64,000 nt of DNA from Macrostomum lignano. Taxonomy: Eukaryota. The stretch spans positions 1-64,000 of the forward strand of contig NIVC01003064.1 in assembly GCA_002269645.1 (NCBI GenBank), written 5' to 3'. The notes below the pieces were generated by a model. That model saw only the letters and a program-made list of their open reading frames with translations, ran no database searches and had not been told where the DNA came from. Below, piece by piece: positions 15,259 to 64,000 of this stretch. A program made the position numbers and the translations under genes. Within the stretch, counting starts at the first letter, position 1, and the number at the start of each line of letters is the position of its first letter.

Positions 15259-15268
15259 AGCGCCCCAG

Positions 15269-39765: not shown

Positions 39766-40038
39766 AAACCAGTTTTGTTAAAAGTGATACTGATTATCAC
39801 TGATATTGATGATATCACTGATATCAGTGATACTGGTAACTCTGATAAGAATTTCACTATGTCAAAAGTACATAGCTGTATCAACCCCACTGGCGAGACA
39901 GTCATAAATAGATTACATTCACAGTTTTTTTCACTGGCTGGCGCAGACCAGTGTACATTGTGAGCCCTCTGCCCCGGAATTTGGACACACGGGCCTGGAG
40001 AGCCCACACCCCAAATCATAGGTTTTTTAGATTTAGAC

Positions 40039-40900: not shown

Positions 40901-41375
40901 ACTTTTTATTACATTATTTGATGCCTCCTTAGGGGAGGGATCGCTGATAAAAAAGCGTAATGTAAAAAATAAAAGAAGCTTCATGTCGAAGTTAAGAGAT
41001 TCATTTGGGAATCCCTACGATGTTGAGGCTTGCAGGGAATCGCTATAATGCTGTAGTAGTGCTATAATGACTCTTAGAGAGAATTACTGAAATTTCAATG
41101 CTTTAGGGTTAGGTTAGGGTTAGGGTTAGGGTTAGGGTTAGGCTAGGGTTAGAAGGTTGACAGATATTTTTAGATTTCCAAGGCTTATTGGGGGCATTGC
41201 TGAGATGTCAAGGGGGGAAGTTGATATGTTAAAGCTTGTGGGGGGGGATAACTGACATGTCAAGGCTTACAAGGTTTGACAGAAGATTTTTCAAGATTTC
41301 AAGGATACATGTAGCTTATTAAAAAAACGTGTATTGCATTTCTTTGGCTCCCCAATGGGGGGCGTAGATTGCTAG

Positions 41376-44300: not shown

Positions 44301-47300
44301 ATTGCTATTAATAAACCAAGCATTACTGCACTCAATAAACCAAGGACTATTGCTCTTGGCAAACCAAGGATTACTGCACTCGATAAGCCAAGGATTATTG
44401 CTATTAATAAACCAAGGATTACTGCACTCGATAAGCCAAGGATTATTGCTATTAATAAACCAAGGATTAATGCACTCGATAAACCAAGGATTATTGCTAT
44501 TAATAAACCAAGGATTACTGCACTCGATAAGCCAAGGATTATTGCTATTAATAAACCAAGGATTATGCACTTGGCAAACCAAGGATTACTGCACTCGATA
44601 AGCCAAGGATTATTGCTATTAATAAACCAAGGATTACTGCACTCAATAAACCAAGGACTATTGCTATTAATAAACCAAGGATTACTGCACTCAATAAACC
44701 AAGGACTATTGCTCTTGGCAAACCAAGGATTACTGCACTCGATAAGCCAAGGACTATTGCTCTTGGCAAACCAAGGATTACTGCACTCGATAAGCCATGG
44801 ATTATTGCTATTAATAAACCAAGGATTACTGCACTCGATAAGCCAAGGATTATTGCTATTAATAAACCAAGGATTACTGCACTCGATAAACCAAGGATTA
44901 TGCACTTGGCAAACCAAGGATTACTGCACTCGATAAGCCAAGGATTATTGCTATTAATAAACCAAGGATTACTGCACTCGATAAGCCAAGGATTATTGCT
45001 ATTAATAAACCAAGGATTAATGCACTCGATAAACCAAGGATTATTGCTATTAATAAACCAAGGATTACTGCACTCGATAAGCCAAGGATTATTGCTATTA
45101 ATAAACCAAGGATTATGCACTTGGCAAACCAAGGATTACTGCACTCGATAAGCCAAGGATTATTGCTATTAATAAACCAAGGATTACTGCACTCAATAAA
45201 CCAAGGACTATTGCTATTAATAAACCAAGGATTACTGCACTCAATAAACCAAGGACTATTGCTCTTGGCAAACCAAGGATTACTGCACTCGATAAGCCAA
45301 GGACTATTGCTCTTGGCAAACCAAGGATTACTGCACTCGATAAGCCATGGATTATTGCTATTAATAAACCAAGGATTACTGCACTCGATAAGCCAAGGAT
45401 TATTGCTATTAATAAACCAAGGATTACTGCACTCGATAAACCAAGGATTATGCACTTGGCAAACCAAGGATTACTGCACTCGATAAGCCAAGGATTATTG
45501 CTATTAATAAACCAAGGATTACTGCACTCAATAAACCAAGGACTATTGCTATTAATAAACCAAGGATTACTGCACTCAATAAACCAAGGACTATTGCTCT
45601 TGGCAAACCAAGGATTACTGCACTCGATAAGCCAAGGACTATTGCTCTTGGCAAACCAAGGATTACTGCACTCGATAAGCCATGGATTATTGCTATTAAT
45701 AAACCAAGGATTACTGCACTCGATAAGCCAAGGATTATTGCTATTAATAAACCAAGGATTACTGCACTCGATAAGGCATGGATTATTGCTATTAATAAAC
45801 CAAGGATTACTGCACTCGATAAGCCAAGGATTATTGCTATTAATAAACCATGATTACTGCACTCGATAAGCCAAGGATTATTGCTATTAATAAACCAAGG
45901 ATTACTGCACTCGATAAGCCAAGGATTATTGCTATTAATAAACCAAGGATTACTGCACTCGATAGCCAAGGATTATTGCTATTAATAAACCAAGGATTAA
46001 TGCACTCGATAAACCAAGGATTATTGCTATTAATAAACCAAGGATTACTGCACTCGATAAGCCAAGGATTATTGCTATTAATAAACCAAGGATTATGCAC
46101 TTGGCAAACCAAGGACTATTGCTCTTGGCAAACCAAGGATTACTGCACTCGATAAGCCAAGGATTATTGCTATTAATAAACCAAGGATTACTGCACTCAA
46201 TAAACCAAGGACTATTGCTATTAATAAACCAAGGATTACTGCACTCAATAAACCAAGGACTATTGCTCTTGGCAAACCAAGGATTACTGCACTCGATAAG
46301 CCAAGGACTATTGCTCTTGGCAAACCAAGGATTACTGCACTCGATAAGCCATGGATTATTGCTATTAATAAACCAAGGATTACTGCACTCGATAAGCCAA
46401 GGATTATTGCTATTAATAAACCAAGGATTACTGCACTCGATAAACCAAGGATTATGCACTTGGCAAACCAAGGATTACTGCACTCGATAAGCCAAGGATT
46501 ATTGCTATTAATAAACCAAGGATTACTGCACTCAATAAACCAAGGACTATTGCTATTAATAAACCAAGGATTACTGCACTCAATAAACCAAGGACTATTG
46601 CTCTTGGCAAACCAAGGATTACTGCACTCGATAAGCCAAGGACTATTGCTCTTGGCAAACCAAGGATTACTGCACTCGATAAGCCATGGATTATTGCTAT
46701 TAATAAACCAAGGATTACTGCACTCGATAAGCCAAGGATTATTGCTATTAATAAACCAAGGATTACTGCACTCGATAAGGCATGGATTATTGCTATTAAT
46801 AAACCAAGGATTACTGCACTCGATAAGCCAAGGATTATTGCTATTAATAAACCATGAATTACTGCACTCGATAAGCCAAGGATTATTGCTATTAATAAAC
46901 CAAGGATTACTGCACTCGATAAGCCAAGGATTATTGCTATTAATAAACCAAGGATTACTGCACTCGATAGCCAAGGATTACTGCGCTTGATAAGCTTGGC
47001 TACATGTATAGGATTATTTCTATCCAGGGATGCTTGCTATTTAGGGATTCTTGCTATGTGCAGGATGCTTGCTATCTGGAAGGATGCTTCTACATTATTT
47101 GGGGTATGCTTGCTATCTGCAAGATGCTTGCTATCTGCAAGATGCTTGCTATCTGCAGATGCTTGCTATCTGGGTGGATGCTTGCTAGGAGTATTAGGGG
47201 ATGCTTGCTACTGGGGGGATGCTTGCTGTCTTGGGAATATTTTCTATTTAGGGGTAATGACTAAAATTCATGAGAGCTAGCCTAGAGGTAAACAGACTAA

Positions 47301-49833
47301 ACTGCTAAATGCAGGGACGATGGTTCGAATTTTTAGAGAGTAGAGTTTTTTTAATTAAAGCCTTTTAACGCCAAGACAAAAAAAATTATGGAAGCGTCAT
47401 GTAAACAATCATACAAGCGTCATGTAAACAATCATAGAAGCGTCATGTAAACAATCATAGAAGCGTCATGTAAAAATCATAGAAGCGTCATGTAAAAATC
47501 ATAGAAGCGTAATGTAAACAATCATAGAAGCGTCATGTTAAAATCATAAAAAGCGTCATGTAAAAAATCATAGAAGCGTCATGTAAACAATCATACAAGC
47601 GTCATGTAAACAATCATAGAAGCGTCATGTAAAAATCATACAAGCGTCATGTAAACAAGCATAGAAGCGTCATGAAAAAATTATAGAAGCGTAATGTAAA
47701 CAATCATAGAAGCGTCATGTTAAAATCATACAAGCGTCATGTAAACAATCATACAAGCGTCATGTAAACAATCATAGAAGCGTCATGTAAAAAAATCATA
47801 GAAGCGTCATGTTAAAATCATAGAAGCGTCATGTAAACAATCATAGAAGCGTCATGTAAACAATCATAGAAGCGTCATGTAAAAATCATAGAAGCGTCAT
47901 GTAAAAATCATAGAAGCGTCATGTAAACAATCATAAAAGCGTCATGTAAACAATCATAGAAGCGTCATGTATACAATCATAGAAGCGTCATGTAAACAAT
48001 CATAGAAGCGTCATGTAAAAAATCATAGAAGCGTCATGTAAAAATCATAGAAGCGTCATGTAAAAATCATAGAAGCGTCATGTAAAAATCATAGAAGCGT
48101 CATGTAAAAAATCATAGAAGCGTCATGTAAAAATCATAAAAGCGTCATGTAAAAAATCATAGAAGCGTCATGTAAACAATCATACAAGCGTCATGTAAAC
48201 AATCATAGAAGCGTCATGTAAAAATCATACAAGCGTCATGTAAACAAGCATAGAAGCGTCATGAAAAAATTATAGAAGCCTCATATAAAAACTAATGAAA
48301 GTGTGTCATTTAAAAAATTAAGAAGCATCATGGAAGAATAAAAGAAGCGTAACGTAAAAATCAAAAGAAGCGTCATGTCAGACATGAAAGAAATGTCATA
48401 TAAAAATTAAATGAAGCTATAGTACAGTGCTGTGCTGGGGAGAATTACTGAGACGTCAAGGCTCACAGAGAATAACTGAGATTACAGGGGGGTTTCTGAG
48501 ATGTTAAAGCAAAAGTCAGAAGCTACTTCAAAGTACATGTACTTTACTTAAGTTTTTTATTGCATTCTTTGTTGGCTTGCCACGGTGGGGGGAGGGCGCT
48601 GATAGAAGAAGAGTCATGTAAAAATAAAAGGAGCACTATGTATACATAAAATAAAAGTCATGTCAAAGTTAAAAGATTCATTTGGGAATTGCTACGATGT
48701 CAAAGCTTGGAGGGAATCGTTATAGTGCTGTGATTCTTAAAGAAGGAATCACTTAAATGCCAAGGCTTAGGGAAGAAGAATTGCTGTGATTTCAAGGCTT
48801 TAGGTTGGGTGAAAGTTAGGTTTACGTCAGGTTTGGGTTGAGGGTTAGATTTTAGCGCGTTTCAAGGTTAACAGGGGATTTTTTAGATTTCAAGGTTTAT
48901 GGGGGCCATCGCTGACATGTCAAGGCTTACGGGGGGGGAATAGCTGAGATGCCAAGGCTCACTGGGGTATAAATGAGATTTCAAGGCTAAAGCCAGAAGC
49001 TACATGTAGTTTATTGAAAACTTTTTATTACATTATTTGATGCCTCCTCAGGGGAGGGATCGCTGATAAAAAAAGCGTAATGTAAAAAATAAAAGAAGCT
49101 TCATGTCGAAGTTAAGAGATTCATTTGGGAATCCCTACGATGTCGAGGCTTGCAGGGAATCGCTATAATGCTGTAGTAGTGCTATAGACTCTTAGAGAGA
49201 ATTACTGAAATTTCAATGCTTTAGGGTTAGGGTTAGGGTTAGGGTTAGGGTTAGAAAATAGACAGATTTTTTAAGATTTCAAGGCTTGTGGGAGCATTGC
49301 TGAGATGTCAAGGGGGAGTTGATATGTTAAGGCTTGTGGGGGGGATTGCTGACATGTCAAGGCTTACAAGGGTACTGGTAGCGTACTGAAGCATACTGGT
49401 AGAAGTAGCTCTGAAAGAAGGCAAGTATGGTTGAATTTCAATGTCTGTTATAAAATTCTGCACAAACATGTTTTATTGGTACATAAGCCTGGAATTAAAA
49501 TGAGAATTCGATTCCTAGCCCCCCTCCCTAAGAATTTTTTTTCATTTAAAAGGATTCGTCCCTTGCTTATTGGCCACCCGAAGGCCATTTTTTATCAAAA
49601 ATGATAAAAATAATTTTTATCAAACACGTTGACATATACAGGGCTCTAAACTAAAAACTGTAAAAAGTTGATAGTTTTGTTTTACCTAAAATGCGTTATT
49701 AACGATCTCCAAAAATTCCTATTTTAAGCTTAAGCTTAAGAAAAACACTTAAAGTACTCCTGCTAAAAGGTATATTATATTAGACGAATATTAATTTTTT
49801 CTGCTCCCCGAAGGGGGGCAAAACTTTAGCTAG
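41376..49833 (+). mobile_element. Helitron unit H4 (near-identical copy of H2, 8458 bp)
   Basis: Same termini as H2, offset 12267-12269 throughout. Confidence 0.8.
42048..46983. repeat. 24-bp dimeric satellite, copy B
   Basis: Same units and same variant order as 29779-34716. Confidence 0.97.
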
Positions 49834-50530
49834 TCTAATATACTAAAAATGAAATGCTTGGTTGCTTGCTTGTAATTGATTTTCTCCCGAACGGCTCAAC
49901 CGATTTTCTTCAAACTTGCACCATTCGATCAGAAATTTTCCCGGGACGGTACATGCATATTGGCTAAGAAATTGCTCAATGTTAAAGGGATTAAATATTC
50001 GAAAAACATGATTTTTTGCAAAGGTCAAGCAGCTCTTTCGACCTGAAATGCATTGTAAGAATGCTAGAGAAAAAACTGACTGACTGAATTCCGATTGTGA
50101 TAAAGATTGCATCACAACAAGTTGAAAACAATGCCGAACAAATGCACACAAAACTTGAATGAAATTGCGTAACCATATTGCCAACTTAAATTGAGACTGA
50201 TACTGGCTGACTGAGAAATTGATTATGTCATAATTTTTTACTCCAATTGACTTGCTGTAAGAATTGAATTATAAGGGCCACAATTCATGTTCTCCAATTG
50301 AAAAGAGATAGCCAAGAAAGATGCGAACAGACTGGACTGCTACTGTAGATGATGGAATAGCCGATGTGTAGGCACTAGGAATTGGTTATAGGCTCGGCTA
50401 GGGTTCGATTCTGCACTGCGTCAAATTTCAGCCAGTAGTGATTGAAGATTATTTAAATTTATTTTTTTCATTCACTTCGTAAATAAAATATTATCTGACT
50501 TTGAATCATTGCAAAAATAGAGCTTGAATC

Positions 50531-51920
50531 AGACTAAACCAGAGTTTAAATCATGGCTAAACCAGAGTCTGAATCATGGCTAAAACCAGTGTTTGAATCA
50601 TGGCTAAACCAGAGTCTGAATCATGGCTAAACCAGAGTCTGAATCATGGCTAAAACCAGTGTTTGAATCATGGCTAAACCATTGTTTGAATCATGGCTAA
50701 ACCAGAGTTTAAGTCATGGCTAAACCATCGTTTGAATCATGACTAAACCAAAGTTTGAATCATGGCAAAACCAGAGTTTGAATCATGGCTAAACCATTGT
50801 TTGAATCATGACTAAACCAGAGTTTGAATCGTGGCTAAACCATCGTTTGAATCATGACTAAACCAAAGTTTGAATCATGGCAAAACCAGAGTTTGAATCA
50901 TGGCTAAACCAAAGTTTGAATCATGGCAAAACCAGAGTTTGAATCATGGCTAAACCATCGTTTGAATCATGGCTAAAACCAGTGTTTGAATCATGGCTAA
51001 ACCAGAGTCTGAATCATGGCTAAACCAGAGTCTGAATCATGGCTAAAACCAGTGTTTGAATCATGGCTAAACCATTGTTTGAATCATGGCTAAACCAGAG
51101 TTTAAGTCATGGCTAAACCATCGTTTGAATCATGACTAAACCAAAGTTTGAATCATGGCAAAACCAGAGTTTGAATCATGGCTAAACCAAAGTTTGAATC
51201 ATGGCAAAACCAGAGTTTGAATCATGGCTAAACCATCGTTTGAATCATGGCTAAACCAGAGTTTAAGTCATGGCTAAACCATCGTTTGAATCATGACTAA
51301 ACCAGAGTTTGAATCGTGGCTAAACCATCGTTTGAATCATGACTAAACCAAAGTTTGAATCATGGCAAAACCAGAGTTTGAATCATGGCTAAACCAAAGT
51401 TTGAATCATGGCAAAACCAGAGTTTGAATCATGGCTAAACCATCGTTTGAATCATGGCTAAACCAGAGTTTGAATCATGGCTAAACCAAAGTTTGAATCA
51501 TGGCAAAACCAGAGTTTGAATCATGGCTAAACCATCGTTTGAATCATGGCTAAACCAGAGTTTGAATCATGGCTAAACCAGAGTTTAAGTCATGGCTAAA
51601 CCATCGTTTGAATCATGGCTAAACCAGAGTTTGAATCATGGCTAAACCAAAGTTTGAATCATGGCAAAACCAAAGTTTGAATCATGGCAAAACCAGAGTT
51701 TGAATCGTGGCTAAACCAGAGTTTGAATCATGGCTAAACCAAAGTTTGAATCATGGCAAAACCAAAGTTTGAATCATGGCAAAACCAGAGTTTGAATCGT
51801 GGCTAAACCATCGTTTGAATCATGACTAAACCAGAGTTTGAATCATGGCTAAACGAGAGTCTGACTCATGGCTAAACCAGAGTTTGAATCATGGCTAAAC
51901 CAGAGTTTGAATCATTGCAA
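50531..51920. repeat. 23-bp satellite TTTGAATCATGGCTAAACCAGAG (H5), 115 bp (5 units) shorter than the H3 copy
   Basis: The duplication offset drops from 12269 to 12154 across this array. Confidence 0.95.
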
Positions 51921-52479
51921 AACCAGTTTTGTTAAAAGTGATACTGATTATCACTGATATTGATGATATCACTGATATCAGTGATACTGGTAACTCTGAT
52001 AAGAATTTCACTATGTCAAAAGTACATAGCTGTATCAACCCCACTGGCGAGACAGTCATAAATAGATTACATTCACAGTTTTTTTCACTGGCTGGCGCAG
52101 ACCAGTGTACATTGTGAGCCCTCTGCCCCGGAATTTGGACACACGGGCCTGGAGAGCCCACACCCCAAATCATAGGTTTTTTAGATTTAGACCACAGATA
52201 CTATAAACACTAGATAGGCCACTCCAGCTAATTTTCACAACACGACAGTTTACTCTACTTTCTGCTTAGTAGTAGTAAAAACATTTTAGCGTTATTTATA
52301 TTTTTTTAAAATAAAAAAACAGATGAATGCAATGCAGCAATTGTATTGATTTTTTGCAAAAAGAAACTTATAATTATACTTTCCACAATTCAAAGCAACA
52401 TTGTGAATGCTTTAGATTGCATAGAAGGCTATATTATTGCAGTCTACTATTGTATATTTAGCAAATACGAGCTATATCA

Positions 52480-53700
52480 TATACTCCATAATCCATATTC
52501 GTGAAGCAAAATAGAAAGATTTCTCATCTTAATCAGCTCATCTGTTTGTGAAACTCGCAGCGTGCTGTCGAAGAACAGGGTCGCCAGTCGCCCTTGTTCA
52601 GAGGCAGCATTCAGAACGGCCCAACAGATGAAAAAAACTGGCGAATGCGCCACTTCAAGGTCCAGGGATGTATCCGATGGAGCCAATCCTCAGTGGTTTC
52701 GTAACAGGCAGCCGATAAGCAGCAGGACTTTTGTGGTGCAGCTGCAATGAGCTGCTGATGAGATGACATCCTTTGACCAGAGCACCCCTGACTGCGAGCG
52801 CCCTGCCGCCCAGTCGACCGCTGGAAGCTGCGCTAGCCACGCCTCCACAGTCCATGGATGCACGACTGCGCTGCACTTGCCTTGACCATCGAGAGTTGCC
52901 GCTGCAGCCGCTTGATTTGCCTGTCGCTTTCGGGATTGCCGCTGCAGCCGCTTGATTTGCCTGTCGCTTTCGGGATTGCCGCTGCAGCCGCTTGATTTGC
53001 CTGTCGTTTTCGGGATTGCCGCTGCAGCCGCTTGATTTGCCTGTCGCTTTCGGGATTGCCGCTGCAGCCGCTTGATTCGCCTGTCACTTTCGGGATTGCC
53101 GCTGCAGCCGCTTGATTCGCCTGTCACTTTCGGGATCGTTGCTGCAGCCGCTTGATCTTTGCCTCTAGCGCTTGGAACCCGCGAATCGGCTGCAGAGGTG
53201 AGAGCTTTCAGCCGCAACAGCTGTTCTCGGCGCAGAATCTGGTAGCCGAAGGTTGCTCTGCCACAGCACTGGCAGCAGGCAAGTCGCAGGCTCGGCTGCA
53301 GATAGATTGCTAATTGGCCCCAGCACTGGAGGGTACATGTCGTCTGCCTCTTCATCGTTTATCAGTCCTTTGCACAGAGGGTAGCTGGTCTATTTGAACG
53401 AGCCGAGGCAGCATCAACTCTTGGTGTGGGATTGCGTCCCAGCGAAAACAGATGTCTTGCACATCCGTGGCACTTTGTAAGGCAGCAGTAGGCCTCGTCC
53501 ATAAAGTGCAAGCTGAACACACGGAGGCCCCGTGATTTAATTGTTTATAAAGATCAATATCCACGCTCCTGTAGTAGCTGCTGCCAGCGCTTCGCCAGTG
53601 TCATCTTTTGGTAATTTATGCATTCGCAACGGATTTTTCTTTCTCGGATGTTAATAGCACTAGTACAAAGCTCGTGCAAGTGGGAGCACAGCAGTGGTTC
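52480..53700 (-). pseudogene. Decayed THAP + P-element transposase N-terminal region
   Basis: Across frames it reads NHCCAPTC, MHKLPKDD, KRWQQLL and S.HFMDEAY (THAP). It continues with a coiled-coil LEAKIKRLQ, GVLWSKDVISSA and GRLATLFFD. Confidence 0.7.
52895..53150. repeat. 40-bp tandem repeat inside the P transposase remnant, about 6-7 copies
   Basis: GCCGCTGCAGCCGCTTGATTTGCCTGTCGCTTTCGGGATT. Confidence 0.92.
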
Positions 53701-54403
53701 GAATCAAAACATTTCTCGAGTACAAGATTAGATAGAAAAGCTAGTATGCACTCGAACTTTCTTTAACTCTGACTCTTGTCCTGTTCATCTATATAAGCTT
53801 GTATTTAAGCACGATTCGCCACCCCCAAATTTTCTAACCCACAACCTCTCAACCCCCACCCCACCCCTAACCCAGGCTAGCTATGTGCAGTCCTTTATTT
53901 TCTATCCCACCACCAGTAGGCCTAAATTATCGATCCACTCACCCTGCCTTATACGAAACTGATATTAACCCTATTCCAGACTACCCCCTTCCTCCACTTT
54001 GAAAGATAGCGGCATTGCACACTGTCTGTCGCGTCTTAATGTACACCATTACTGCACAAAACAAGTTAGTTGTTTATGGCGTTAGCAAAACGATGTCTTA
54101 AAAACAGTCACTCGATTTGTCTAATTTAGCAAATAATACTGTTGCTTCCTTTCATTGCTACTAAGCAGAAAGTAGAATAAAAAACTTGCCCAGAAAATTA
54201 GCCTGAGTGGCCTATCTAGTGTTTATAGTATCTGTGATTTAGACCCCTTTCTTCTTTATCGATTTTTCAGTTTCTACCCTGCGTCTTAAGATAAGCTCCA
54301 ATTCAGCCCACTGGATGATAAATAGCCTGTAATAGTTTGGCTCAAGGGCACCTTATCTGATTCTTCAGACATCCAAATTCACAAACTTTCATCTTTCAAA
54401 CCT

Positions 54404-55478
54404 TAGAATCTCTTAGATCCCAATCCTAAATTCATAGAATCTCTTATATCCCAATCCTAAATTCACAGAATCTCTTAGATCCCAATCCTAAATTCACAGA
54501 ATCTCTTAGATCCCAATCCTAAATTCATAGAATCTCTTAGATCCCAATCCTAAATTCACAGAATCTCTTAGATCCCAATCCTAAATTCATAGAATCTCTT
54601 ATATCCCAATCCTAAATTCATAGAATCTCTTAGATCCCAATCCTAATCTCATAGAATCTCTTAGATCCCAATCCTAATCTCATAGAATCTCTTAGATCCC
54701 AATCCTAAATTCATTGAATCTCTTAGATCACAATCCTAAATTCACAGAATCTCTTAGATCCCAATCCTAAATTCACAGAATCTCTTAGATCCCAATCCTA
54801 AATTCACAGAATCTCTTATATCCCAATCCTAAATTCATTGAATCTCTTAGATCCCAATCCTAATCTCATTGAATCTCTTAGATCCCAATCCTAAATTCAT
54901 AGAATCTCTTAGATCCCAATCCTAAATTCATTGAATCTCTTAGATCCCAATCCTAATCTCATTGAATCTCTTAGATCCCAATCCTAAATTCATAGAATCT
55001 CTTAGATCCCAATCCTAAATTCACAGAGTCTCTTAGATCCCAATCCTAAATTCATGGGATCTCTTAGATCCCAATCCTAAATTCATAGAATCTCTTAGAT
55101 CCCAATGCTAAATTCTTAGAATCTCTTAGATCCCAATCCTAAATTCACAGAATCTCTTAGATCCCAATGCTAAATTCAGAGAATCTCTTAGATCCCAATC
55201 CTAAATTCATAGAATCTCTTATATCCCAATCCTAAATTCTTAGAATCTCTTAGATCCCAATCCTAAATTCATAGAATCTCTTAGATCCCAATCCTAAATT
55301 CACAGAATCTCTTAGATCCCAATGCTAAATTCACAGAATCTATTAGATTCCAATCCTAAATTCATAGAATCTCTTAAATCCCAATCCTAAATTCATAGAA
55401 TCTCTTAGATCCCAATCCTAAATTCATAGAATCTCTTAGATCCCAATCCTAAATTCACAGAATCTTATATATCAATCC
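54404..55478. repeat. 31-bp satellite AGAATCTCTTAGATCCCAATCCTAAATTCA(C/T) (also 59706-60038)
   Basis: Period 31 read directly (54421, 54452). Confidence 0.95.
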
Positions 55479-56402
55479 TAGATCATTGCTTAGCCTAATT
55501 GGGTTCATTGCATAACAGAACTAAGATCATTGCTTAGCGTAATTGGGATCATTTGGCATAACTAAGTTGGGATCCTTGCATACTAAATTGGGATCAAGGC
55601 AAACCAGAATAGGATCGGATACAATCGGATCCCAATTTAGTTGTGCCATGAAAGTTAATAAGTAATAGTGAAATTAATGTAGGTAAATATTAGGTGAATA
55701 TATAGCAGGTTGGCTGCATATCAATGGGCCTTGAGATTGTGGTTGAAATAACGTGTTCGCTGCTTTTTCACGATTCAGAGGTTCTTCCACTCTAAAACTG
55801 AGGGTATGCAGCCATGAGAGAGAGGTTTGAAGCAGCTTCAGCAAACCTAGAGACTTGTGATAGCTAAGCTTTTTGTGTGACGTTGAGTGCGTGAACTTAA
55901 CTTGCCCCAGTGAATGCCTCTGACCAGCAGTGCAGAGTAAAGCAAGCCAACAAGCAGTAGGATTGACACCATTATTCTTGCAGTCAAATGCAATGAACTG
56001 TGCAATGATACTGTCTTGTTGGCGGAGCAATCTGCGAATTCATCATCTCTACTGTCTTTGTAAGTAAGTATTCACAAAGCAATTATTAAACTCATCAGTT
56101 GTCATTGAATTCCCTTATTTATAATATGTTATTTTGCATACTTTCATATGGATGTTTGTTTAGTTAAAAACTTTCAATTAAGCTCCAAAACTTCATTTTA
56201 GGTTCTAAATTGATCATAGCAATGAGCTGTGTCAGTTAAGTTTCTTATTTTCATTTAGGAGTAAGAAAAAGCAACACGAAACACTTATTTATCCAGTAAA
56301 CAGAATTATTTATTTTATTTATTTAGAATTCTTTAAATTCTCAAACACATAAATAAAAAAATCAAGAAATCATATCAAGTTAATTCCACAAACAAATTGA
56401 AT

Positions 56403-56433
56403 TTAATTATTCCGCTGCTGCTGCTGCTGCGGC

Positions 56434-56477
<44 letters not shown>

Positions 56478-56478
56478 C

Positions 56479-56522
<44 letters not shown>

Positions 56523-56764
56523 CTGCTGCTGCAGCCGCATGTCGGCCAGGTCCGGACACCGGGCCACAGGGTGACCTCCACCGCAGAGATAACAGGCCAC
56601 TGTTAAGTTTGGAAAGTGCAATTTTACTCAACAGGTGGTTTCGAAAGACTTAATTACAGTAATGAGACTTAGAAATGAGACTTACTAGGTTTTCTAGGGT
56701 GTCCACCACCGCGGCCTCCTCGCCGCCTGCCGCCGCCGGAAAAGAAGTTCTGGGTAAACTTCAT
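56403..56764 (-). CDS. Two-exon 91-aa microprotein: RGG-rich + CX2CX3HX4C zinc knuckle + polyQ
   Basis: Exon 1 56764-56686 (79 nt) reads MKFTQNFFSGGGRRRGGRGGGHPRKP|gtaagt. An 86-nt intron ends ttaacag. Exon 2 56599-56403 reads MACYLCGGGHPVARCPDLADMRL-Q33-P-Q5-RNN*. The frame joins exactly (276 nt). TATAAA at 56838-56843, CCAAT at 56877-56881 and AATAAA at 56309-56314 are all on the minus strand. Confidence 0.75.
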
Positions 56765-57581
56765 TTGTGGAACAGTGGAGTTAAACAGTGGAACTATACA
56801 GTGGAAATTATACGAGCGTGTCGTACGCTCACTCTGGTTTATATACGCTCACTCATGTCAAGCAAGGATTAGCGAGATTGGTTTGAAAACCTTGCTAACG
56901 AAATGAAACTCATTTCATTTTTTTAAAGCCCGTTTCAGCTTAGGCAAAAATGAATACCAGCTTAGGGCCACCCCCAACCCCAGTTAAAATCGTGTGAGGC
57001 TTCATTGGTGAGCGTCATGAGGCTTTAGCTGTTTGTGATTACTGAAAAGTCGCACTAGGTTGGGGCTTGCACTGGCAGTTTAATGAAATCACTTTAGTTG
57101 AATACAAAGTTTACTGCTATTGGCTGACTTGAAACCCTCTATTTTTAGCCACGTTAGCCACACGCCGCACTGGCTTCCCAATTACAGTGTACATTTAAGA
57201 TCTTTTTTGTGTCCTATTATTGAAGTGTGTCGAAAACAGATTGCATAACAAGTCGCACCACACTCGACTCTGACACCCCACACAGTGTACATAAAGAAAG
57301 AACGTAAAAGCTAAGGCAATCACCAGCCAATCCACAACAAGTAGCCCAGTGGGTGGATTAGAACAAAACTCTCTCTGATTGGTTAGCCAGATCTAAATTG
57401 ATCTTTACATGGCACCCTCTATTGGCATGAGTCATCACAGTTAGGGTTGTCCGAAACGAAATGCTGCAATATAAACTGGCACAATTGGCCTTGATGCTAA
57501 AACTATCAAACCACAAACCGTAAAGACCTTATCAGTGAAATTTTTATAATCCATATTTTTGGCAACTATCAATCGAGCAAT
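56765..57581. promoter_or_regulatory. Candidate bidirectional promoter
   Basis: Minus TATA at 56838-56843 and plus TATAAA at 57470-57475. CCAAT/ATTGG at 56877, 57327, 57378 and 57421. TGAGTCA at 57428-57434. Confidence 0.55.
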
Positions 57582-58990
57582 ATGGAGTCAACCGAAGGAG
57601 CCAAGAAAAGCAAAGCGTGTATCTCTGCTCTGCTTCCGGGCCTGATGCACGCTGCAATCGTTGGCCTCGTAATGAGGCTGTCCAAAATCACGGACTTTGA
57701 AGGCAAAAGAGGACCAGGCCAAGTGTTTTCCTTTATCCTCTGTGACGACACCGGCGATATACGTGTAAGCGTGTTCGGAAAGGATCTTAAGCCTTTCCTG
57801 GAGGTGTGTCGTGAGGGCGTCGCCGTCCGCATATCCGGCGGCTGGGTGAAGAAGGCGGATCCCAAATACAGCACTACGGACAATGAGCACGAGCTAACAG
57901 TTTCAATTGACCAACGTGGAACCATTGTGAGGACCCTCGAGACCGTCACTCGACGTGCACCAAGCTATAAGAAGATAAAAGAGATTTCGGACTGTGAAAT
58001 GAAAATGTAAGTTAACTTGTTGCAATTGTTAAAAATAAAATGGAAAGGATTTGGAATATATATTCCCACTAAATGTTAGGTTAGCCAATTATTTCTAGGG
58101 AAACTTATTTAAATCAGTCAGTGAAGTTGCTTAGTGAATGAGTTAATGCATTCTTGTAAGTTCACCCTTTGCCTCACATATCTCAGGAATGTTAACGTCT
58201 ATGGCACGATTTCTGCTGTCCAGAAACCAACGGAAGTTAAAACCGGTTCCGGAAAACTCATCAACCTGGCGAAAGTGACGCTTGTTGATCAGTCTGGGTC
58301 CTCCGTGTCGTGCACATTTTGGGCCAGCTCTACTGCCCAAGTGAATGACTGGTCTGTGGGCGACGTTCTAGCGATTCATGGTGCTCAAGTCCAGGAATAT
58401 TCCCAGACAATCAGTCTCGGATGTTCGAAAGCGGAAATTCAGCATTGGCCAGAAGACTCTGCTGATGTCTCCGACATTACCCAGTGGTACAAGGATGCGC
58501 TTTCTAGCCAACAGTGCTTCGAGGAGCTACGGGTGACGCAAAGCTCCCAGCGGGAGAAATATGCTAACCGTGACGACGAAATGGTATTACAGTACCCAGA
58601 GCGAATGTTCGACCAATTCGATGAGGTGCGAAGAATTAAAGTGCGATTTGGGGACAAAGAGGTAAGTTGATTTTACGAGTATTACGTGTGGGTTAAATAG
58701 AAATATGGTGTCAGAGAACGTACTAAAGAAGCAATAAGTGATTGACTGCTTAGATTCATTATTAACTTGTTCAATGAGGCCTCTTATCTCTAAAGATTAG
58801 GTTTATTCATTCATTCAAGAGTAATATGAATATAAAAAATTGATTAAATTCATATATAAATTTCATTTCACAGGTGACATTTTCCCGAGATCATATCAAC
58901 AGAAGTCAGCAGATCCCCGCTATGTCAACCCCTAAGGCTCCCAATGTGTCCGAGAAGCCTGGGCCATCACATGATTTCATGGACGAGTAG
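57582..58990 (+). CDS. RPA1-like: Three-exon RPA70-like ssDNA-binding protein (DBD-A + DBD-B OB folds only), 338 aa
   Basis: Exons 57582-58006, 58187-58661 and 58874-58990; both donors gtaagt, 1017 nt open. Motifs GQVFSFILCDDTGDIRVSVF, VKKADPKYSTTDNEHE, VTLVDQSG..VSCTFW, VLAIHGAQVQEY and TQWY match RPA70 DBD-A/B. AATAAA lies at 59004-59009. Confidence 0.88.
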
Positions 58991-59204
58991 GACTTGAAAG
59001 ACTAATAAAGATGCAATTAACGTGAGTAATGCTTGAGTGCATTTTTGTCTGCCAGTAGCGCATCTGAGTTCGATAGCCATCTCAAGTAGTTTAACCTGAT
59101 ATGTATAATACGGCCCGATGAGACGTATCAGGTAAATCCTGCTTTATTCACCTAATAAATTAAAATTAGATGGGATCATAATGGAATTGGGATCAGTGAT
59201 TAGC

Positions 59205-60700
59205 TAAGCAAAATGATTAGCTAAATTGTGTTCATTGCATAACAGAACTGAGATCATTGCTTAGCGAAATTGGGTTCATTGCATAACAGAACTGAGATCA
59301 TTGCTTAGTTAAATTGGGTTTATGGCATTACAGAACTGAGATTCAAGGGGGTTGTAGCCTAGTGGTTAGGGCGTCGGACTCACGACTTGAAGGTCGGGGG
59401 TTCGATTCCCGATCCCTCTGCAACAATTTGTGTCCTTGAGCAAGACACTTAACTCTGCGTTGCTTCAGTTTACCCAGCTGTAAAATGGGTACCAGCATTA
59501 GCTGGGGTAATTGAGGGTGTGTGTGGCGACCCCCCAGTCCTTGGACTGAACAGCTGTACGCAGCCTTCAGATGCGCCGCGCAATAGCTGCGGCTGAGCTG
59601 TCGGTTGCACATCTGCCCATTGGGCAGGTGTAATCAATTATTATTATTATTAGAACTGAGAGCATTGCTTAGCTAAATTGGGTTCATTGCTTGTTCATTG
59701 GGTTCACAGAATCTCTTAGATCCCAATCCTAAATTCACAGAATCTCTTAGATCCCAATCCTAAATTCACAGAATCTCTTAGATCCCAATCCTAAATTCAT
59801 AGAATCTCTTAGATCCCAATGCTAAATTCTTAGAATCTCTTAGATCCCAATCCTAAATTCACAGAATCTCTTAGATCCCAATGCTAAATTCACAGAATCT
59901 ATTAGATTCCAATCCTAAATTCATAGAATCTCTTAAATCCCAATCTTAAATTCATAGAATCTCTTAGATCCCAATCCTAAATTCATAGAATCTCTTAGAT
60001 CCCAATCCTAAATTCACAGAATCTTATATATCAATCCTAAATCATTGCTTAGCTAAATTGTGTTTGTGGCATAACAGAAGTGAGATCATTGCTTAGCTAA
60101 ATTGTGTTTGTGGCATAACAGAAGTGAGATCATTGCTTAGCCTAATTGGGTTCATTGCATAACAGAACTAAGATCATTGCTTAGCGTAATTGGGATCATT
60201 TGGCATAACTAAGTTGGGATCCTTGCATACTAAATTGGGATCATAGCAAACCAGAATTGGAATTATCGCATAATGAAATTGGGCTCATGGCATGATACGA
60301 ATGGGATCATTGAAGAATGGAAAATTGGATTCATAGTTTACCAGAATTATGATTAGTAAGAGGGGCGTCCGTAAGGTAATGAAAATTTTCTGCTACGAGT
60401 TGGGATCAAGGCAAACCAGAATAGGATCGAATTGGGTTCCCAATAGCCAATTGGGTTCCCAACCCAATAGCTAAATTGTGTTTGTGGCATAACAGAAGTG
60501 AGATCATTGCTTAGCTAAATTGTGTTTGTGGCATAACAGAAGTGAGATCATTGCTTAGCCTAATTGGGTTCATTGCATAACAGAACTAAGATCATTGCTT
60601 AGCGTAATTGGGATCATTTGGCATAACTAAAATGGGATTATTGCATAACTAAATTGAGATCCTTTCATAACTAGATTGAGATCATTGCATAACTAGATTG
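59205..60700. repeat. ~43-44 bp degenerate satellite (CATAACAGAACTGAGATCATTGCTTAGCTAAATTGGGTTCATTG) flanking the SINE and the 31-bp array
   Basis: Units at 59210-59340, 60040-60230 and 60470-60700, with related units at 55480-55620. Confidence 0.8.
59342..59651 (+). mobile_element. Full-length tRNA-derived CORE-type SINE (310 bp)
   Basis: A/B-box head at 59347-59410, CORE-like TGTGTCCTTGAGCAAGACACTTAAC..TCAGTTTACCCAGCTGTAAAATGGG at 59429-59489, and an (ATT)n tail. The 10-bp TSD AGAACTGAGA lies at 59332-59341 and 59652-59661. Confidence 0.9.
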
Positions 60701-61138
60701 GGATCAAGGCAAACCAGAATAGGATCGGATACAATCGGATCCCAATTTAGTTGTGCCATGAAAGTTAATAAGTAATAGTGAAATTAATGTAGGTAAATAT
60801 TAGGTGAATATATAGCAGGTTGGCTGCATATCAATGGGCCTTGAGATTGTGGTTGAAATAACGTGTTCGCTGCTTTTTCACGATTCAGAGGTTCTTCCAC
60901 TCTAAAACTGAGGGTATGCAGCCATGAGAGAGAGGTTTGAAGCAGCTTCAGCAAACCTAGAGACTTGTGATAGCTAAGCTTTTTGTGTGACGTTGAGTGC
61001 GTGAACTTAACTTGCCCCAGTGAATGCCTCTGACCAGCAGTGCAGAGTAAAGCAAGCCAACAAGCAGTAGGATTGACACCATTATTCTTGCAGTCAAATG
61101 CAATGAACTGTGCAATGATACTGTCTTGTTGGCGGAGC
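60700..61138. repeat. Near-identical copy of about 55590-56028
   Basis: GGGATCAAGGCAAACCAGAATAGGATCGG through CTTGTTGGCGGAGC matches in both places. Confidence 0.9.
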
Positions 61139-64000
61139 CTTCTGCAAGTGCATCATGTTTACTGTTTGTGGGTAATATTTTTAGGTGCAATGCAATTTTT
61201 TCTTTTTTCATTGAACTGAATCCCATTACTGTCCCATTACTGTCGTTTTCTGACATTACTCAGTAGTCACAACTTGTTTCTGTCGAAAAAATAATTTAAC
61301 AAACGAAAGAGGAAAATCGCTGAATTCTCTACATTTGGAGTTTGTTTTCTTATAATGTCATAATGATGTGTATTTGTATAATAATAATTTTGCCAGATGC
61401 TCACTCAATTGTTGTTGTTTTGTTGTTTTCAATGTGTTTTGCAATTGAAGAAATACAAAAAATGTTTCAGTGGACAAAGACCAGTCCCATGATTCATGAA
61501 TCTGCACACCTGGTACCTGCCTTATTCTATTTTAAAAGATAAATTGTCAGGCATGCATTTGTAATGAAGAATGATACAAAATGGATTACTAAGAAAAGAG
61601 GTCAGATGAGAAATAGGATCTGATCAGAACTGGAATCATTAAGAAAAAGAAAGGATATTAGAAATTGATCCATTGATATTTAATTAGCCATTGATATGAG
61701 CTAACCATTTTGAACTATCAAAATGGATCTAATTTGAAATAGACTTTTATGTCATATAGGATTTGATTCAAAATAAGATTTGACAATGTGAATGAGGCAT
61801 ATAAGAAAAGAGAAGTCTGCTGAGGAGTGTGACTAGAAAAGAAAGGGGGAATTTAGCATGATAATATATATCATATATCATGCCTATATATAGCCAATGT
61901 TAGCTTTATTAAAAGTGTCAAACCAAAGGTCGAAGGATGTAGCTCCAGTTGCTTTTGCAAAGTCCATTCACAATGAGATAGCTGCATTGAACTGACTCTT
62001 TAAGTCATTTATTATAATAAGAGGGGCCTCATTCAAGGGCAATAGTTGCAATGCTGAGCTACTTATTGTTCGGAACATTGCAGTCGCAGTTAGTACGATG
62101 AGCAGGGCTAAGAAATTCACTTACAAATGAAGAAAGTAAAAAATTTCTCGGGATGTGTATAAAACTGTAGTACACATGAGCAATACAAGCAACAAGAAAA
62201 TCGGAATAAAGCAAGTCATTTCTCGGAAAGTCGCAATTTCTTGGAATATTATTTAATTTATTTTCAGTAACAACTAAAAAAGTGATCTCAACAGTTTTAT
62301 AAACTAAATAAATAAAATAATTTTTATCAAACACGTTGACATATACAGGGCTCTAAACTAAAAAACTGTAAAAAGTTGATAGTTTTGTTTTACCTAAAAT
62401 GCGTTATTAACGATCTCCAAAAATTCCTATTTTAAGCTTAAGCTTAAGAAAGACACTTAAAGTACTCCTGCTAAAAGGTATATTATATTAGACGAATATT
62501 AATTATTTCTGCTCCCCGAAGGGGGGCAAAACTTTAGCTAGTTATTAATTCTGTTTGTGGACGCGATCATTGAGCTCTTGACAATCCTTGGTATCAGTTG
62601 CAGGCGGATTTGTGTAGTGTCTTGATCGGTAGATAAAGTGAAACTTTTTTATATTTACTGTAAATTTATTCAATGTATGTATAGTCACCAGGTCTATTAA
62701 TGTAAAGCCAAATTACTATTTTTATAGGGGCCTAGTTAGTCATTGTTTGAATTGGAATAGAATATATTTCATTAATATTATGGTTAATATTAAGTTATTA
62801 GCTATGATCAATGACAATAACAAGGACCATTAGAAGTTACCACTGACATCGGCCTATCATTATTCTATGCTTCAAAACTTATAAATATAATGTATGATGG
62901 CAGAAAGCTATTGTATTAGTAGTAGTAGTAGTAGTAGTGGTAGTAATAGTATAATTATGGCCAAAATGTTTTATCATAGACAAACTCACTGACTAAAAGC
63001 TAAAACCTATCTAAGTAATGCTTTTTGAGAGTACCAGTCATTTCAATGACAAGTTGTTTTAGTGATAGATGTTTCAATGGCAAAAATCATTTTGGCATGA
63101 TTTTGCCATGCTTTTCTCTTTGACTTTGACACTTTGTGATAGACACACTTCATTTTTGATGGAAAATTAAATATTTCATAAGTATAATCATTTTAGTGAT
63201 AAGAGGCACTTTATAATATTAGTGTGTAATTATTTTGTGAAGATTTATATTTTATACATATATTTATAAATTTCTATCAAAATATTAATATATTTAAAAA
63301 AAGAAATCAAACTAATTATATTGTTTTCTTTTGTGCAAATTGTTTTGAATTGTTCTAAATATTCAGAATATTCAAACATATACATATGCAACCCTGATTT
63401 ATACTGATTATATGACTAACTTTTTGACCAAAAATGTGATTTACCTATGAACGAAATGCTAATAAAAATTAATGCAATTTGGATAAATGGCAGAAATACT
63501 GCCTTATTAAGGCTAAATACCCCATCATATAATTAGTACTACTTAGGAGGTTCAACCCCTAGCTTTTTATAGGAAGTCACTGGAGACCTGGTTTAAGCAG
63601 CTAGAATCACAATTTACCCTATTGGAATAAGTTGACAAAATGCGGACAACTGTCTGTCGCATTTTTGGATTCTCCTGCTGTCGCGTTGCGTGACAGTGGT
63701 GTCAAGTGGTGTGTCACGTCGCGCGACACTGGAAACCTGGTGTCGTCATGCGTCGTGTCGCGTGACACGACACAACGAGACGCGTAAGTGTGGCAACTTG
63801 GCGGCTAGTGTCATCATGTGTTGCATTGCGGCCTAGATCTGCATCCAAAACCTCGCAAACTGTGTTTCATTGTAATATGTTCACAGTTGTTTCTCGGTAT
63901 TTAAATGTTTCAAACATGTTTGATAAAAACTAATTCTTGAATTGTTCTTTTTTATTTTGACTGTAAAATAACTAATACTTTAAATATAATTTCTAGAAAG

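What the first reader, a model, noticed from the sequence alone, without database searches (positions are those of the whole stretch)
56403..56764. Hidden 91-aa RGG / zinc-knuckle / polyQ microprotein gene inside a Helitron
Seen: a complete small gene that the ORF track splits. It has CCAAT, TATA, ATG, a gtaagt donor, an 86-nt intron, an exact phase-1 join, a stop and AATAAA. The product is RGG-rich (GGGRRRGGRGGG), then CYLCGGGHPVARC (CX2CX3HX4C), then Q33PQ5. Known: RGG boxes and CCHC knuckles bind single-stranded nucleic acid and act as chaperones (retroviral nucleocapsid, CNBP). Inference: a nucleocapsid-like, possibly condensate-forming accessory factor carried by a rolling-circle element. 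I do not know of such cargo in Helitrons.
Basis: partly seen in the sequence, partly recalled or inferred. Interest (0 to 1): 0.88.

Follow-up and report, generated by a model that had tools for sequence, protein, structure and literature searches.

The report
Small zinc-knuckle gene inside flatworm Helitron
A real two-exon gene for a ~90-residue basic, zinc-knuckle-like, polyglutamine protein sits head-to-head with an RPA-like gene inside a rolling-circle transposon (Helitron) of the flatworm Macrostomum lignano. It is conserved in a distant relative of that element, so it looks like an undescribed accessory gene, but its function is untested.

Summary
The gene model is correct as written: ATG 56764, exon 1 56764-56686, 86-nt GT..AG phase-1 intron, exon 2 56599-56403, 91 aa. 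The window is Macrostomum lignano contig NIVC01003064.1, bases 1-64000.

The gene lies inside a canonical Helitron at 49834-62541: 5' TC, subterminal 3' hairpin plus CTAG, A|T target. This copy has no RepHel gene; sibling copies carry a 1137-aa RepHel upstream.

The small gene is antisense, 818 nt from an RPA70 DBD-A/B-like gene whose three-exon model equals the GenBank protein exactly. One sibling copy carries an RNA-seq-derived annotated CDS with the same start, end and intron length, so the gene is unannotated only in some copies.

A diverged locus (RPA ~50% identical) keeps the same pair, orientation, intron position and phase, all four Cys/His ligands, the basic patch and the polyQ. Non-synonymous differences are 0.27 per site against saturated synonymous sites; intron and upstream DNA align no better than shuffles.

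The knuckle is CX2CX3HX4C, not canonical zf-CCHC, and Pfam gives no hit. Its spacing matches the eIF3g knuckle. A nucleocapsid-like or condensate role remains inference.

Verdict: a real, constrained Helitron cargo gene; a new variant of a known kind; moderate interest.

The parts
49834..62541 (+). Helitron (HLE1-type) copy that carries the small gene. It is 12.7 kb and non-autonomous here because the RepHel gene is absent.
   Evidence: The 5' end TCTAATATAC... starts at 49834 and the 3' end ...CTAG ends at 62541. Sibling copies share homology up to exactly these ends and then differ. There is no RepHel homology in the window by blastn or tblastx.
49834..49853 (+). Helitron 5' terminus (TC...)
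   Evidence: The same start follows unrelated left flanks that end in A in L005 and L006, and follows another unit's CTAG in the window.
62511..62541 (+). Helitron 3' terminus: GC hairpin GCTCCCCGAAGGGGGGC, a 10-nt spacer, CTAG, followed by T
   Evidence: 7-8 bp stem. The pattern occurs 5 times in the window against 0 expected by chance.
56686..56764 (-). Small gene, exon 1 (ATG plus 26 codons plus 1 nt). It encodes MKFTQNFFS and the Arg/Gly-rich patch at 56702-56737.
   Evidence: Conserved in L001 as an 85-nt exon with the same A|GTAAGT donor and phase 1.
56600..56685 (-). 86-nt GT..AG intron, phase 1
   Evidence: The sibling annotated CDS needs an intron of 86 nt. L001 has a 97-nt intron at the same codon position, and its sequence aligns no better than shuffles.
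56403..56599 (-). Small gene, exon 2: knuckle C-X2-C-X3-H-X4-C at 56556-56594, CAG/CAA tract at 56415-56531 (Q33-P-Q5), RNN, and TAA at 56403-56405
   Evidence: The knuckle ligands and spacing are conserved in L001.
56309..56323 (-). Two overlapping AATAAA poly(A) signals, 80-94 nt past the stop
   Evidence: sequence only
56765..57581 (.). 817-nt divergent intergenic region between the small gene and the RPA-like gene. It holds a TATA box (56840-56845) and a CCAAT box (56877-56881) for the small gene.
   Evidence: The equivalent ATG-to-ATG spacing in L001 is 867 nt.
57582..58990 (+). RPA70 DBD-A/B-like gene with 3 exons (57582-58006, 58187-58661, 58874-58990), 338 aa
   Evidence: The joined exons equal GenBank proteins PAA53567.1, PAA54715.1, PAA72160.1 and PAA73688.1 exactly. 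Pfam gives OB fold at 6e-14 and REPA_OB_2 at 2e-12. PDB 1jmc (RPA70 DBD-A/B) matches at E 1.9e-13.
54404..55465 (+). Internal 31-bp satellite of the element. A second array lies at 59703-60042, and 44-bp arrays lie at 59214-59342 and 60041-60706.
   Evidence: The arrays are present in all sibling copies.
59343..59702 (+). Segment private to this copy, containing a tRNA-Val-derived SINE (tRNA part 59346-59421)
52194..54235 (+). 2.04-kb segment (40-bp satellite) that is absent from sibling copies L006-L008

Best explanation
The locus is a genuine, transcribed protein-coding gene under purifying selection. It is part of the cargo of an HLE1-type Helitron family of Macrostomum lignano.

In full-length siblings the gene order is RepHel (+), small gene (-), RPA70 DBD-A/B-like gene (+). 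The small gene and the RPA-like gene share a ~0.8-kb divergent promoter region.

The product is 89-91 aa. It has a basic Arg/Gly-rich N-terminal patch, one Cys-X2-Cys-X3-His-X4-Cys motif that most likely binds one zinc ion as a knuckle, and a ~Q31-33 tract.

The most likely mechanism is inferred, not shown. The protein would be a small nucleic-acid-binding partner made together with the element's single-strand-DNA-binding RPA-like protein. It would act on the single-stranded or hairpin DNA, or on the RNA, of the element. The polyQ tract would drive self-association or partner binding.

Shown here: gene structure, position inside the element, copy distribution, conservation and constraint. Inferred: zinc binding, nucleic-acid binding, co-regulation, and any role in the element's life cycle.
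For: Gene model.

Identity of the window: L004 is identical to the window, and the record is NIVC01003064.1 of GCA_002269645.1.

Indirect expression and splice evidence:
- Sibling copy L007 has an annotated minus-strand CDS at 8801-9183 with 98 residues. My model gives exactly that start, end and length for that copy, and it requires the 86-nt intron.
- The GenBank annotation of this assembly was built from genome-guided RNA-seq transcripts plus TransDecoder. Transcripts overlapping repeat annotation were removed (PMC5730564).

Helitron context:
- The termini lie at 49834 and 62541, with A|TC...CTAG|T junctions in several different flanks.
- A 1137-aa Helitron_like_N + PIF1 gene lies upstream on the RPA strand in L009. 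The same DNA is 99.8% identical in L008.
- All 7 copies whose RPA-like gene has the full upstream region carry the small gene with an identical 49-residue non-repeat part.

Deep conservation in L001 (RPA-like protein 48-52% identical to the window's):
- Same head-to-head arrangement, same intron position, same phase 1, same A|GTAAGT donor.
- 27 of 45 aligned residues are identical, z = 12 against shuffles. All four Cys/His ligands and the X2/X3/X4 spacing are invariant, and a polyQ tract follows.
- pN is 0.27 against pS 0.82, which is saturated.
- The intron and 200 nt upstream align no better than shuffled sequence.

Partner gene: RPA70 DBD-A/B-like, with dN/dS ~0.14-0.19 against L002.

The knuckle spacing equals that of the solved eIF3g zinc knuckle 2mjc.
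Against: - No Pfam family matches, including zf-CCHC.
- PDB matches are weak: E 0.08 to a retroviral Gag knuckle and E 0.37 to eIF3g.
- HMMER against 1.84 billion representative proteins returned only 4 weak, repeat-boosted generic CCHC hits.
- Deep conservation rests on one diverged contig of 2.7 kb, from an unidentified organism. Its Helitron context is unseen.
- The M. lignano copies are too similar to test selection: 3 variable sites in 817 intergenic nt.
- 2 of 7 copies have an altered C-terminus. One has a frameshift in the CAG tract and one has a changed tail.
- One sibling (L005) carries an annotated longer CDS that reads the CAG tract in another frame.
- I saw no RNA-seq reads or peptides myself.
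Confidence: 0.6

Rival explanations
1. Element-encoded transcriptional regulator. The knuckle and basic patch would bind double-stranded DNA or RNA of the element, and the polyQ tract would act as an activation or co-factor domain. The protein would tune expression of the RPA-like and RepHel genes rather than handle single-stranded transposition intermediates.
For: PolyQ tracts are common in transcription factors (general knowledge). The gene shares a compact divergent promoter region with the RPA-like gene in both lineages. All the conservation evidence fits this reading as well as the best explanation.
Against: A single knuckle of this size is better known for binding single-stranded nucleic acid (general knowledge). 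No DNA-binding family matches. Nothing in the data tells the two readings apart.
Confidence: 0.2
2. Passenger: a fragment captured from a host CCHC/polyQ gene or from a retroelement gag. It would be transcribed because of where it sits but have no function for the element or the host.
For: Helitrons often capture gene fragments (PMC11417382). The product is mostly low-complexity. The closest database hits are generic CCHC-repeat proteins. The CAG tract is unstable: 2 of 7 copies have an altered C-terminus. Within-genome copies give no selection signal.
Against: The diverged locus L001 keeps the start codon, intron position and phase, all ligand residues, the basic patch and the polyQ. Its intron and flanks are randomised and synonymous sites are saturated. 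Non-synonymous divergence (0.34) is below that of the neighbouring RPA-like gene (0.43-0.48).
Confidence: 0.12
3. Host gene pair. The RPA-like gene and the small gene would be cellular genes that were swallowed once by, or merely lie beside, Helitron DNA. Their many copies would reflect the recent genome duplication of M. lignano.
For: The assembly has 180-312 Mb of duplicated blocks (PMC5730564). The copies are 98.5-99.9% identical. The Helitron context of L001 is unknown.
Against: The pair lies between canonical Helitron termini. Copies sit in at least three different flanking contexts. A 5'-truncated copy lies beside a Kelch gene and is absent from two paralogous loci. RepHel sits upstream in the position typical of HLE1 elements with RPA. 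Several diverged RPA-like lineages exist within single samples.
Confidence: 0.08
4. The true product is different: a longer or chimeric transcript that reads exon 2 in another frame (poly-Ser or poly-Ala). On this reading the 91-aa ORF is an annotation coincidence.
For: L005 has an annotated 174-aa minus-strand CDS that ends at the stop of the Ser frame of the CAG tract. All three frames of the tract are open.
Against: The Gln-frame model alone links a conserved ATG exon to the conserved knuckle through a conserved phase-1 intron in two lineages. The knuckle is read in the Gln frame. I could not rebuild the 174-aa model from a simple two-exon join.
Confidence: 0.05

Closest known systems
Recurrent accessory or captured genes of Helitron-like elements (RPA-like, OTU, endonuclease and 17 further domains catalogued by HELIANO, PMC11417382)
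   Same: It is a second or third gene carried between canonical Helitron termini together with RepHel and an RPA-like gene. As reported for HLE1, the RPA-like gene lies downstream of RepHel.
   Different: No zinc-knuckle or CCHC domain is named among the domains in that paper's main text. The gene is a spliced antisense microprotein that matches no Pfam family, so domain-based surveys would miss it.
zf-CCHC zinc knuckles (Pfam PF00098) of retroelement Gag nucleocapsid proteins and of the cellular protein CNBP
   Same: It has the Cys-Cys-His-Cys ligand order, Gly before the His, Pro after the last Cys, and a basic flanking patch. phmmer gives a weak match to a Gag knuckle, 2ec7, at E 0.08. It is a TE-encoded small basic protein.
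   Different: The spacing is C-X2-C-X3-H-X4-C, one residue short, in both lineages. Pfam gives no hit at E<=10. There is a single knuckle, it is followed by polyQ, and the element is a DNA transposon with no capsid.
Zinc knuckle of translation initiation factor eIF3g (PDB 2mjc; Pfam PF12353)
   Same: It has the identical C-X2-C-X3-H-X4-C spacing and aligns without gaps. This is the only Pfam family that appears for the knuckle peptides of both lineages (E 0.06-0.24).
   Different: The scores are far below the family cut-off (12-14 bits against 24.4). The rest of eIF3g is absent. The likeness is in motif geometry, not in demonstrated homology.
Replication protein A 70-kDa subunit, DBD-A/B (PDB 1jmc), the neighbour gene's family
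   Same: The partner gene encodes two OB folds that align to RPA70 DBD-A/B at E 1.9e-13.
   Different: The partner lacks the N-terminal domain and the zinc-containing DBD-C of RPA70 (general knowledge of RPA70). The small protein shows no similarity to any RPA part.

Membership tests
Helitron (HLE1-type rolling-circle transposon) | 5' terminus TC and 3' terminus CTRR | tested here: met
   5' TCTAATATAC... starts at 49834 and 3' ...AGCTAG ends at 62541. The same ends recur at four other unit junctions in the window.
Helitron (HLE1-type rolling-circle transposon) | Subterminal GC-rich hairpin about 10-15 nt before the 3' end | tested here: met
   GCTCCCCGAAGGGGGGC at 62511-62527, 14 nt before the end. 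It folds with a 7-8 bp stem, -6.6 kcal/mol.
Helitron (HLE1-type rolling-circle transposon) | Insertion between A and T without target-site duplication; ends defined by copies in different flanks | tested here: met
   Left flanks end in A before TC in L005 and L006. A T follows CTAG in the window, L005, L009 and L012, and the flanks differ between copies. No clean empty site was recovered, because L012 against L013 is not a simple filled/empty pair.
Helitron (HLE1-type rolling-circle transposon) | RepHel protein (Rep endonuclease plus PIF1-type helicase) in autonomous members | tested here: met
   It is absent from the window copy. A 1137-aa gene with Helitron_like_N, PIF1 and Pif1_2B sits upstream of the pair in sibling L009, and the same DNA is present in L008.
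zf-CCHC zinc knuckle (Pfam PF00098) | C-X2-C-X4-H-X4-C spacing | tested here: not met
   The spacing is C-X2-C-X3-H-X4-C in the window and in L001.
zf-CCHC zinc knuckle (Pfam PF00098) | Match to the family profile at or above the curated cut-off | tested here: not met
   There is no zf-CCHC hit at E<=1 for the whole protein or at E<=10 for the knuckle peptides.
zf-CCHC zinc knuckle (Pfam PF00098) | Zinc coordination by the three Cys and one His | not testable with these tools
   All four ligands are invariant between the two lineages.
eIF3g-type knuckle (Pfam PF12353; PDB 2mjc) | C-X2-C-X3-H-X4-C spacing and a profile match | tested here: inconclusive
   The spacing is identical and the alignment has no gaps. 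The profile scores are 12-14 bits against a cut-off of 24.4.
RGG/RG box | Clustered RGG repeats | tested here: inconclusive
   The window has RRRGGRGGG, with two RGG. L001 has RRRRRGGREG, with one RGG. What is conserved is an Arg-rich basic patch rather than an RGG array.
Protein-coding gene under purifying selection | Conserved frame, intron position and phase, and dN below dS between diverged copies | tested here: met
   Window against L001: phase-1 intron at the same codon, pN 0.27 against pS 0.82, and non-coding DNA at random level. This rests on one comparator only.
Expressed spliced gene | Transcript with the 56686|56599 junction | tested here: inconclusive
   The evidence is indirect. 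An RNA-seq-derived annotated CDS in sibling L007 has exactly the model's start, end and residue number. I could not inspect reads, and the annotated protein sequence could not be retrieved.

The most novel reading that the evidence does not exclude
A DNA transposon family maintains its own three-gene module for handling single-stranded DNA. The module would consist of RepHel, an RPA70 DBD-A/B-like protein, and a dedicated knuckle-polyQ microprotein. The microprotein would serve as a nucleic-acid chaperone or condensate scaffold for the rolling-circle intermediate. That would be a functional analogue of retroelement nucleocapsid proteins, evolved in a capsid-less DNA element.
Probability: 0.22. 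Interest if true: 0.75.

Novelty: new variant of a known kind. Interest (0 to 1): 0.55.

Why it matters
Helitron accessory genes are catalogued by Pfam domain, mainly RPA, OTU and endonuclease. A spliced, antisense, ~90-residue protein that matches no profile is invisible to such surveys.

This one is conserved together with the RPA-like gene across a divergence at which non-coding DNA is randomised. That argues the element needs it, or benefits from it.

If it is a nucleic-acid-binding partner of the RPA-like protein, it would add a component to the poorly known host-independent machinery of eukaryotic rolling-circle transposition. It would also show that microproteins can be TE cargo.

The practical lesson is that repeat-filtered annotation hides real genes. 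The gene is annotated in only 1 of the 7 copies examined.

Tried and rejected
**Searches that found no relatives or failed**
- The search for homologous proteins with the small protein failed twice on time-out and once because the query was too short. One search was lost from the cap.
- HMMER against 1.84 billion representatives gave only 4 weak, repeat-boosted generic CCHC hits and no orthologue.
- Exact look-ups of the 91-, 89-, 98- and 99-aa products were not in the collection.
- Metagenome scans (RPA profile, then small-protein profile) and one viral-contig scan found no relatives.
- The UniRef M. lignano RPA-like paralogues P0010 and P0012 could not be placed on contigs. Other lineages in the same genome therefore stay unexamined.
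- The run accessions of L001-L003 occur in no paper held here. The Macrostomum cliftonense/hystrix genome paper lists only an ENA BioProject accession and no SRR run accessions. The source organism of L001 is unknown.

**Readings considered and set aside**
- L002 and L003 start inside the RPA-like gene and say nothing about the small gene.
- The 398-aa 'cluster mates' P0014 and P0016 are Kelch proteins, not RPA variants.
- I first read 56073-59213 as an insertion between duplicated satellite blocks. That was superseded once the true element ends were found.
- A possible hairpin and CTAA just after the RPA-like gene is not an element end.
- I could not rebuild L005's 174-aa model as a two-exon join.
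- The sigma-70 promoter and terminator scan is irrelevant for a eukaryote.

Full report
**1. The observation**

On the minus strand, an ATG at 56764 opens a 79-nt exon that ends in A|GTAAGT. An 86-nt intron (56685-56600) ends in TTAACAG. A 197-nt second exon runs to the TAA at 56405-56403.

The joined 276 nt read in phase 1. They give 91 aa: MKFTQNFFSGGGRRRGGRGGGHPRKPMACYLCGGGHPVARCPDLADMRL, then Q33, P, Q5, RNN. Without splicing, the frame stops after 31 aa. That is why the mechanical ORF list shows two pieces.

**2. Where the window comes from**

The neighbouring plus-strand ORFs are OB folds. I joined three exons at GT..AG sites: 57582-58006, 58187-58661 and 58874-58990. The result is a 338-aa protein.

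That protein is, letter for letter, GenBank PAA53567.1, PAA54715.1, PAA72160.1 and PAA73688.1 of Macrostomum lignano. One of its four loci is contig NIVC01003064.1, with the gene at 57582-58990, and its DNA is identical to the window. The window is therefore bases 1-64000 of that contig of assembly GCA_002269645.1.

The protein aligns to RPA70 DBD-A/B (1jmc, E 1.9e-13; Pfam).

**3. The element**

Seven loci (L004-L010) carry this RPA-like gene with the full upstream region. An eighth (L012) carries a truncated copy.

Their shared homology stops on the right at exactly one place. That place is a GC hairpin (GCTCCCCGAAGGGGGGC, 62511-62527), ten bases, then CTAG ending at 62541, followed by T. 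After that the sequences differ.

On the left, the sequence TC(C)TATATACTAAAAATGA... begins after unrelated flanks that end in A in L005 and L006. In the window it begins after the CTAG of the preceding unit.

This is the classical Helitron signature: 5' TC, 3' hairpin plus CTAG, and an A|T target. The hairpin-CTAG pattern occurs five times in the window against none expected by chance. The window holds a head-to-tail array of units: 29107-37564, 37565-41375, 41376-49833 and 49834-62541.

The small gene lies in the last unit, which is 12.7 kb. This copy has no RepHel homology at all.

- In sibling L009, an annotated 1137-aa gene with Helitron_like_N, PIF1 and Pif1_2B lies upstream on the same strand as the RPA-like gene.
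- L008 shares that DNA at 99.8% identity.
- L005 keeps only a C-terminal remnant.
- A second RepHel family, 79% identical, follows in L008, L010 and L013.

RPA downstream of RepHel is the arrangement reported for HLE1 (PMC11417382).

The copies sit in at least three different flanking contexts. The 5'-truncated copy begins between the two genes, and so lacks the small gene. It lies beside a Kelch gene and is absent from two paralogous loci. 'Inside a Helitron' is therefore right, with the qualification that the window copy is non-autonomous.

**4. Is the small gene real?**

*Within M. lignano.* All seven copies have the gene 818 nt upstream of the RPA-like ATG, in antisense. The 49 non-repeat residues are identical in all of them.

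- Five copies keep the frame through Q31 or Q33 to ...PQQQQQRNN.
- One copy has a frameshift in the CAG tract.
- One copy has a changed C-terminal tail.

The copies are too young to test selection. There are 3 variable sites in 817 intergenic nt and 0 in the 147 coding nt.

*The diverged locus.* The informative comparison is L001, a 2.7-kb Logan contig from run SRR24204725. Its RPA-like exons are 48-52% identical to the window's.

Upstream, on the opposite strand and 867 nt from the RPA-like ATG, it has three parts:
- an 85-nt exon, MKIINNFYGSPSPFGRRRRRGGREGKKK, ending in A|GTAAGT;
- a 97-nt intron;
- a second exon reading (I)TCYLCAGPHPVRRCPALAKQRQQQQQQQ up to the contig end.

The intron sits at the same codon, two residues before the first Cys, and in the same phase.

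- Twenty-seven of 45 aligned residues are identical, z = 12 against shuffles.
- C, C, H and C and their X2/X3/X4 spacing are invariant.
- Non-synonymous differences are 0.27 per site. Synonymous differences are 0.82, which is saturated.
- The intron gives 60 matches against a shuffled mean of 54 (maximum 61). The 200 nt upstream give 120 matches against a shuffled mean of 119. Both are at random level.

The small gene's dN (0.34) is lower than that of the RPA-like gene next to it (0.43-0.48).

This is the pattern of a protein-coding gene under purifying selection. It rests on a single comparator.

**5. Expression**

I could not look at reads. However, sibling L007 has an annotated minus-strand CDS at 8801-9183 with 98 residues. 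My model applied to that copy gives an ATG at 9183, a 79-nt exon, an 86-nt intron, a 218-nt exon ending at 8801, and 98 aa.

The GenBank annotation of this assembly derives from genome-guided RNA-seq transcripts (StringTie, TACO, TBONE and TransDecoder). Transcripts overlapping repeat annotation were removed (PMC5730564). That explains both why the model exists and why most copies lack it.

L005 carries a longer annotated CDS that reads the CAG tract in the Ser frame. Alternative transcripts are therefore possible.

**6. What the protein is**

No Pfam family is matched, zf-CCHC included, at E<=1 for the protein or at E<=10 for the knuckle peptides.

Against PDB sequences, the best hits are:
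- a retroviral Gag knuckle (2ec7, E 0.08, needs a one-residue gap);
- the eIF3g knuckle (2mjc, E 0.37, no gap, same CX2CX3HX4C spacing).

HMMER against 1.84 billion representatives found only four weak hits to proteins with repeated generic CCHC knuckles.

The motif is therefore knuckle-like, with an unusual but precedented spacing that is conserved in both lineages. It is not a demonstrable member of zf-CCHC.

The 'RGG box' is better described as a conserved Arg-rich basic patch. The polyQ tract is present in both lineages.

**7. Mechanism**

Shown here: a constrained small gene, kept head-to-head with the element's RPA-like single-strand-DNA-binding gene, inside a Helitron whose full-length siblings encode RepHel.

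Inferred: the two genes are co-expressed from the shared ~0.8-kb region. The small protein binds zinc and nucleic acid through the knuckle and basic patch. It acts with the RPA-like protein on the element's single-stranded or hairpin DNA or on its RNA, and the polyQ tract mediates association.

I put 0.6 on the general statement (real accessory gene, nucleic-acid-binding). I put about 0.2-0.3 on the specific chaperone or condensate role.

The rivals are an element-encoded transcription regulator (0.2), a neutral captured passenger (0.12), a host gene pair (0.08) and a different frame or product (0.05).

**8. Novelty**

RPA, OTU, endonuclease and 17 further domains are reported as recurrent Helitron cargo. 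The main text of that survey names no zinc-knuckle or CCHC domain. Full-text searches that combined Helitron with zinc knuckle, CCHC or RPA found no description of such a gene.

I class this as a new variant of a known kind, namely Helitron accessory genes. It is not categorically new.

**9. Limits**

- There is only one deep comparator, and its organism is unknown.
- I inspected no reads or peptides.
- Other RPA-bearing Helitron lineages of M. lignano could not be fetched.
- The direct functional test lies outside what this report may propose.

Noticed in passing
window 29107-62541: There is a head-to-tail array of four Helitron-family units that share the same 5' start and 3' hairpin-CTAG end: 29107-37564, 37565-41375, 41376-49833 and 49834-62541. 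The 12.27-kb '99% duplication' (28631-39656 = 40901-51925) is two of these unit pairs. The 3.8-kb unit uses a variant 3' end (...GGCTCCCCAATGGGGGGCGTAGATTGCTAG).
   Followed up: partly
window 29780-34726 and 42049-46993; also 27255-28015, 35113-36110, 38231-39772, 47380-48378, 50500-51926: The 8.46-kb Helitron-like units are mostly satellite DNA. They hold a ~5-kb array with 48/96/335-bp periodicity and several 23-bp arrays. Internal 31-bp and 44-bp arrays also flank the gene pair in every sibling copy. Satellites therefore seem to travel with this Helitron family.
   Followed up: partly
window 59343-59702 (tRNA part 59346-59421); related fragment at 775-843: A tRNA-Val-derived SINE-like insertion lies inside the element. 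It is present only in this copy.
   Followed up: partly
window 10000-24300: This is a GC-rich (50-63%) block made of many different minisatellites with periods of 15-83 bp. The long ORFs there are repeat artefacts. A 28-bp unit from this block (13566-14014) also forms the left flank of the Helitron copy in L005.
   Followed up: no
L012 17664-22817, against L011 and L013: A 5'-truncated copy of the element, with the RPA-like gene but without the small gene, lies 2.8 kb downstream of a Kelch-repeat gene. It is missing from two paralogous loci. A UniRef 880-aa 'Rab9 effector with kelch motifs' clusters with the RPA-like protein, which suggests a chimeric gene model across this insertion.
   Followed up: partly
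L009 6441-6678, against window 59016-59252: The ~240 nt after the RepHel stop codon are 85% identical to the ~240 nt after the RPA-like stop codon, poly(A) signal included. In each case 44-bp and 31-bp satellites follow. This is a duplicated 3' module inside the element.
   Followed up: no
L008 16703-21024, L010 8646-12978, L013 15636-17738: A second RepHel lineage, about 79% identical in DNA to the one in L009, lies just downstream of several copies. The region therefore holds nested or tandem Helitrons of at least two subfamilies.
   Followed up: no
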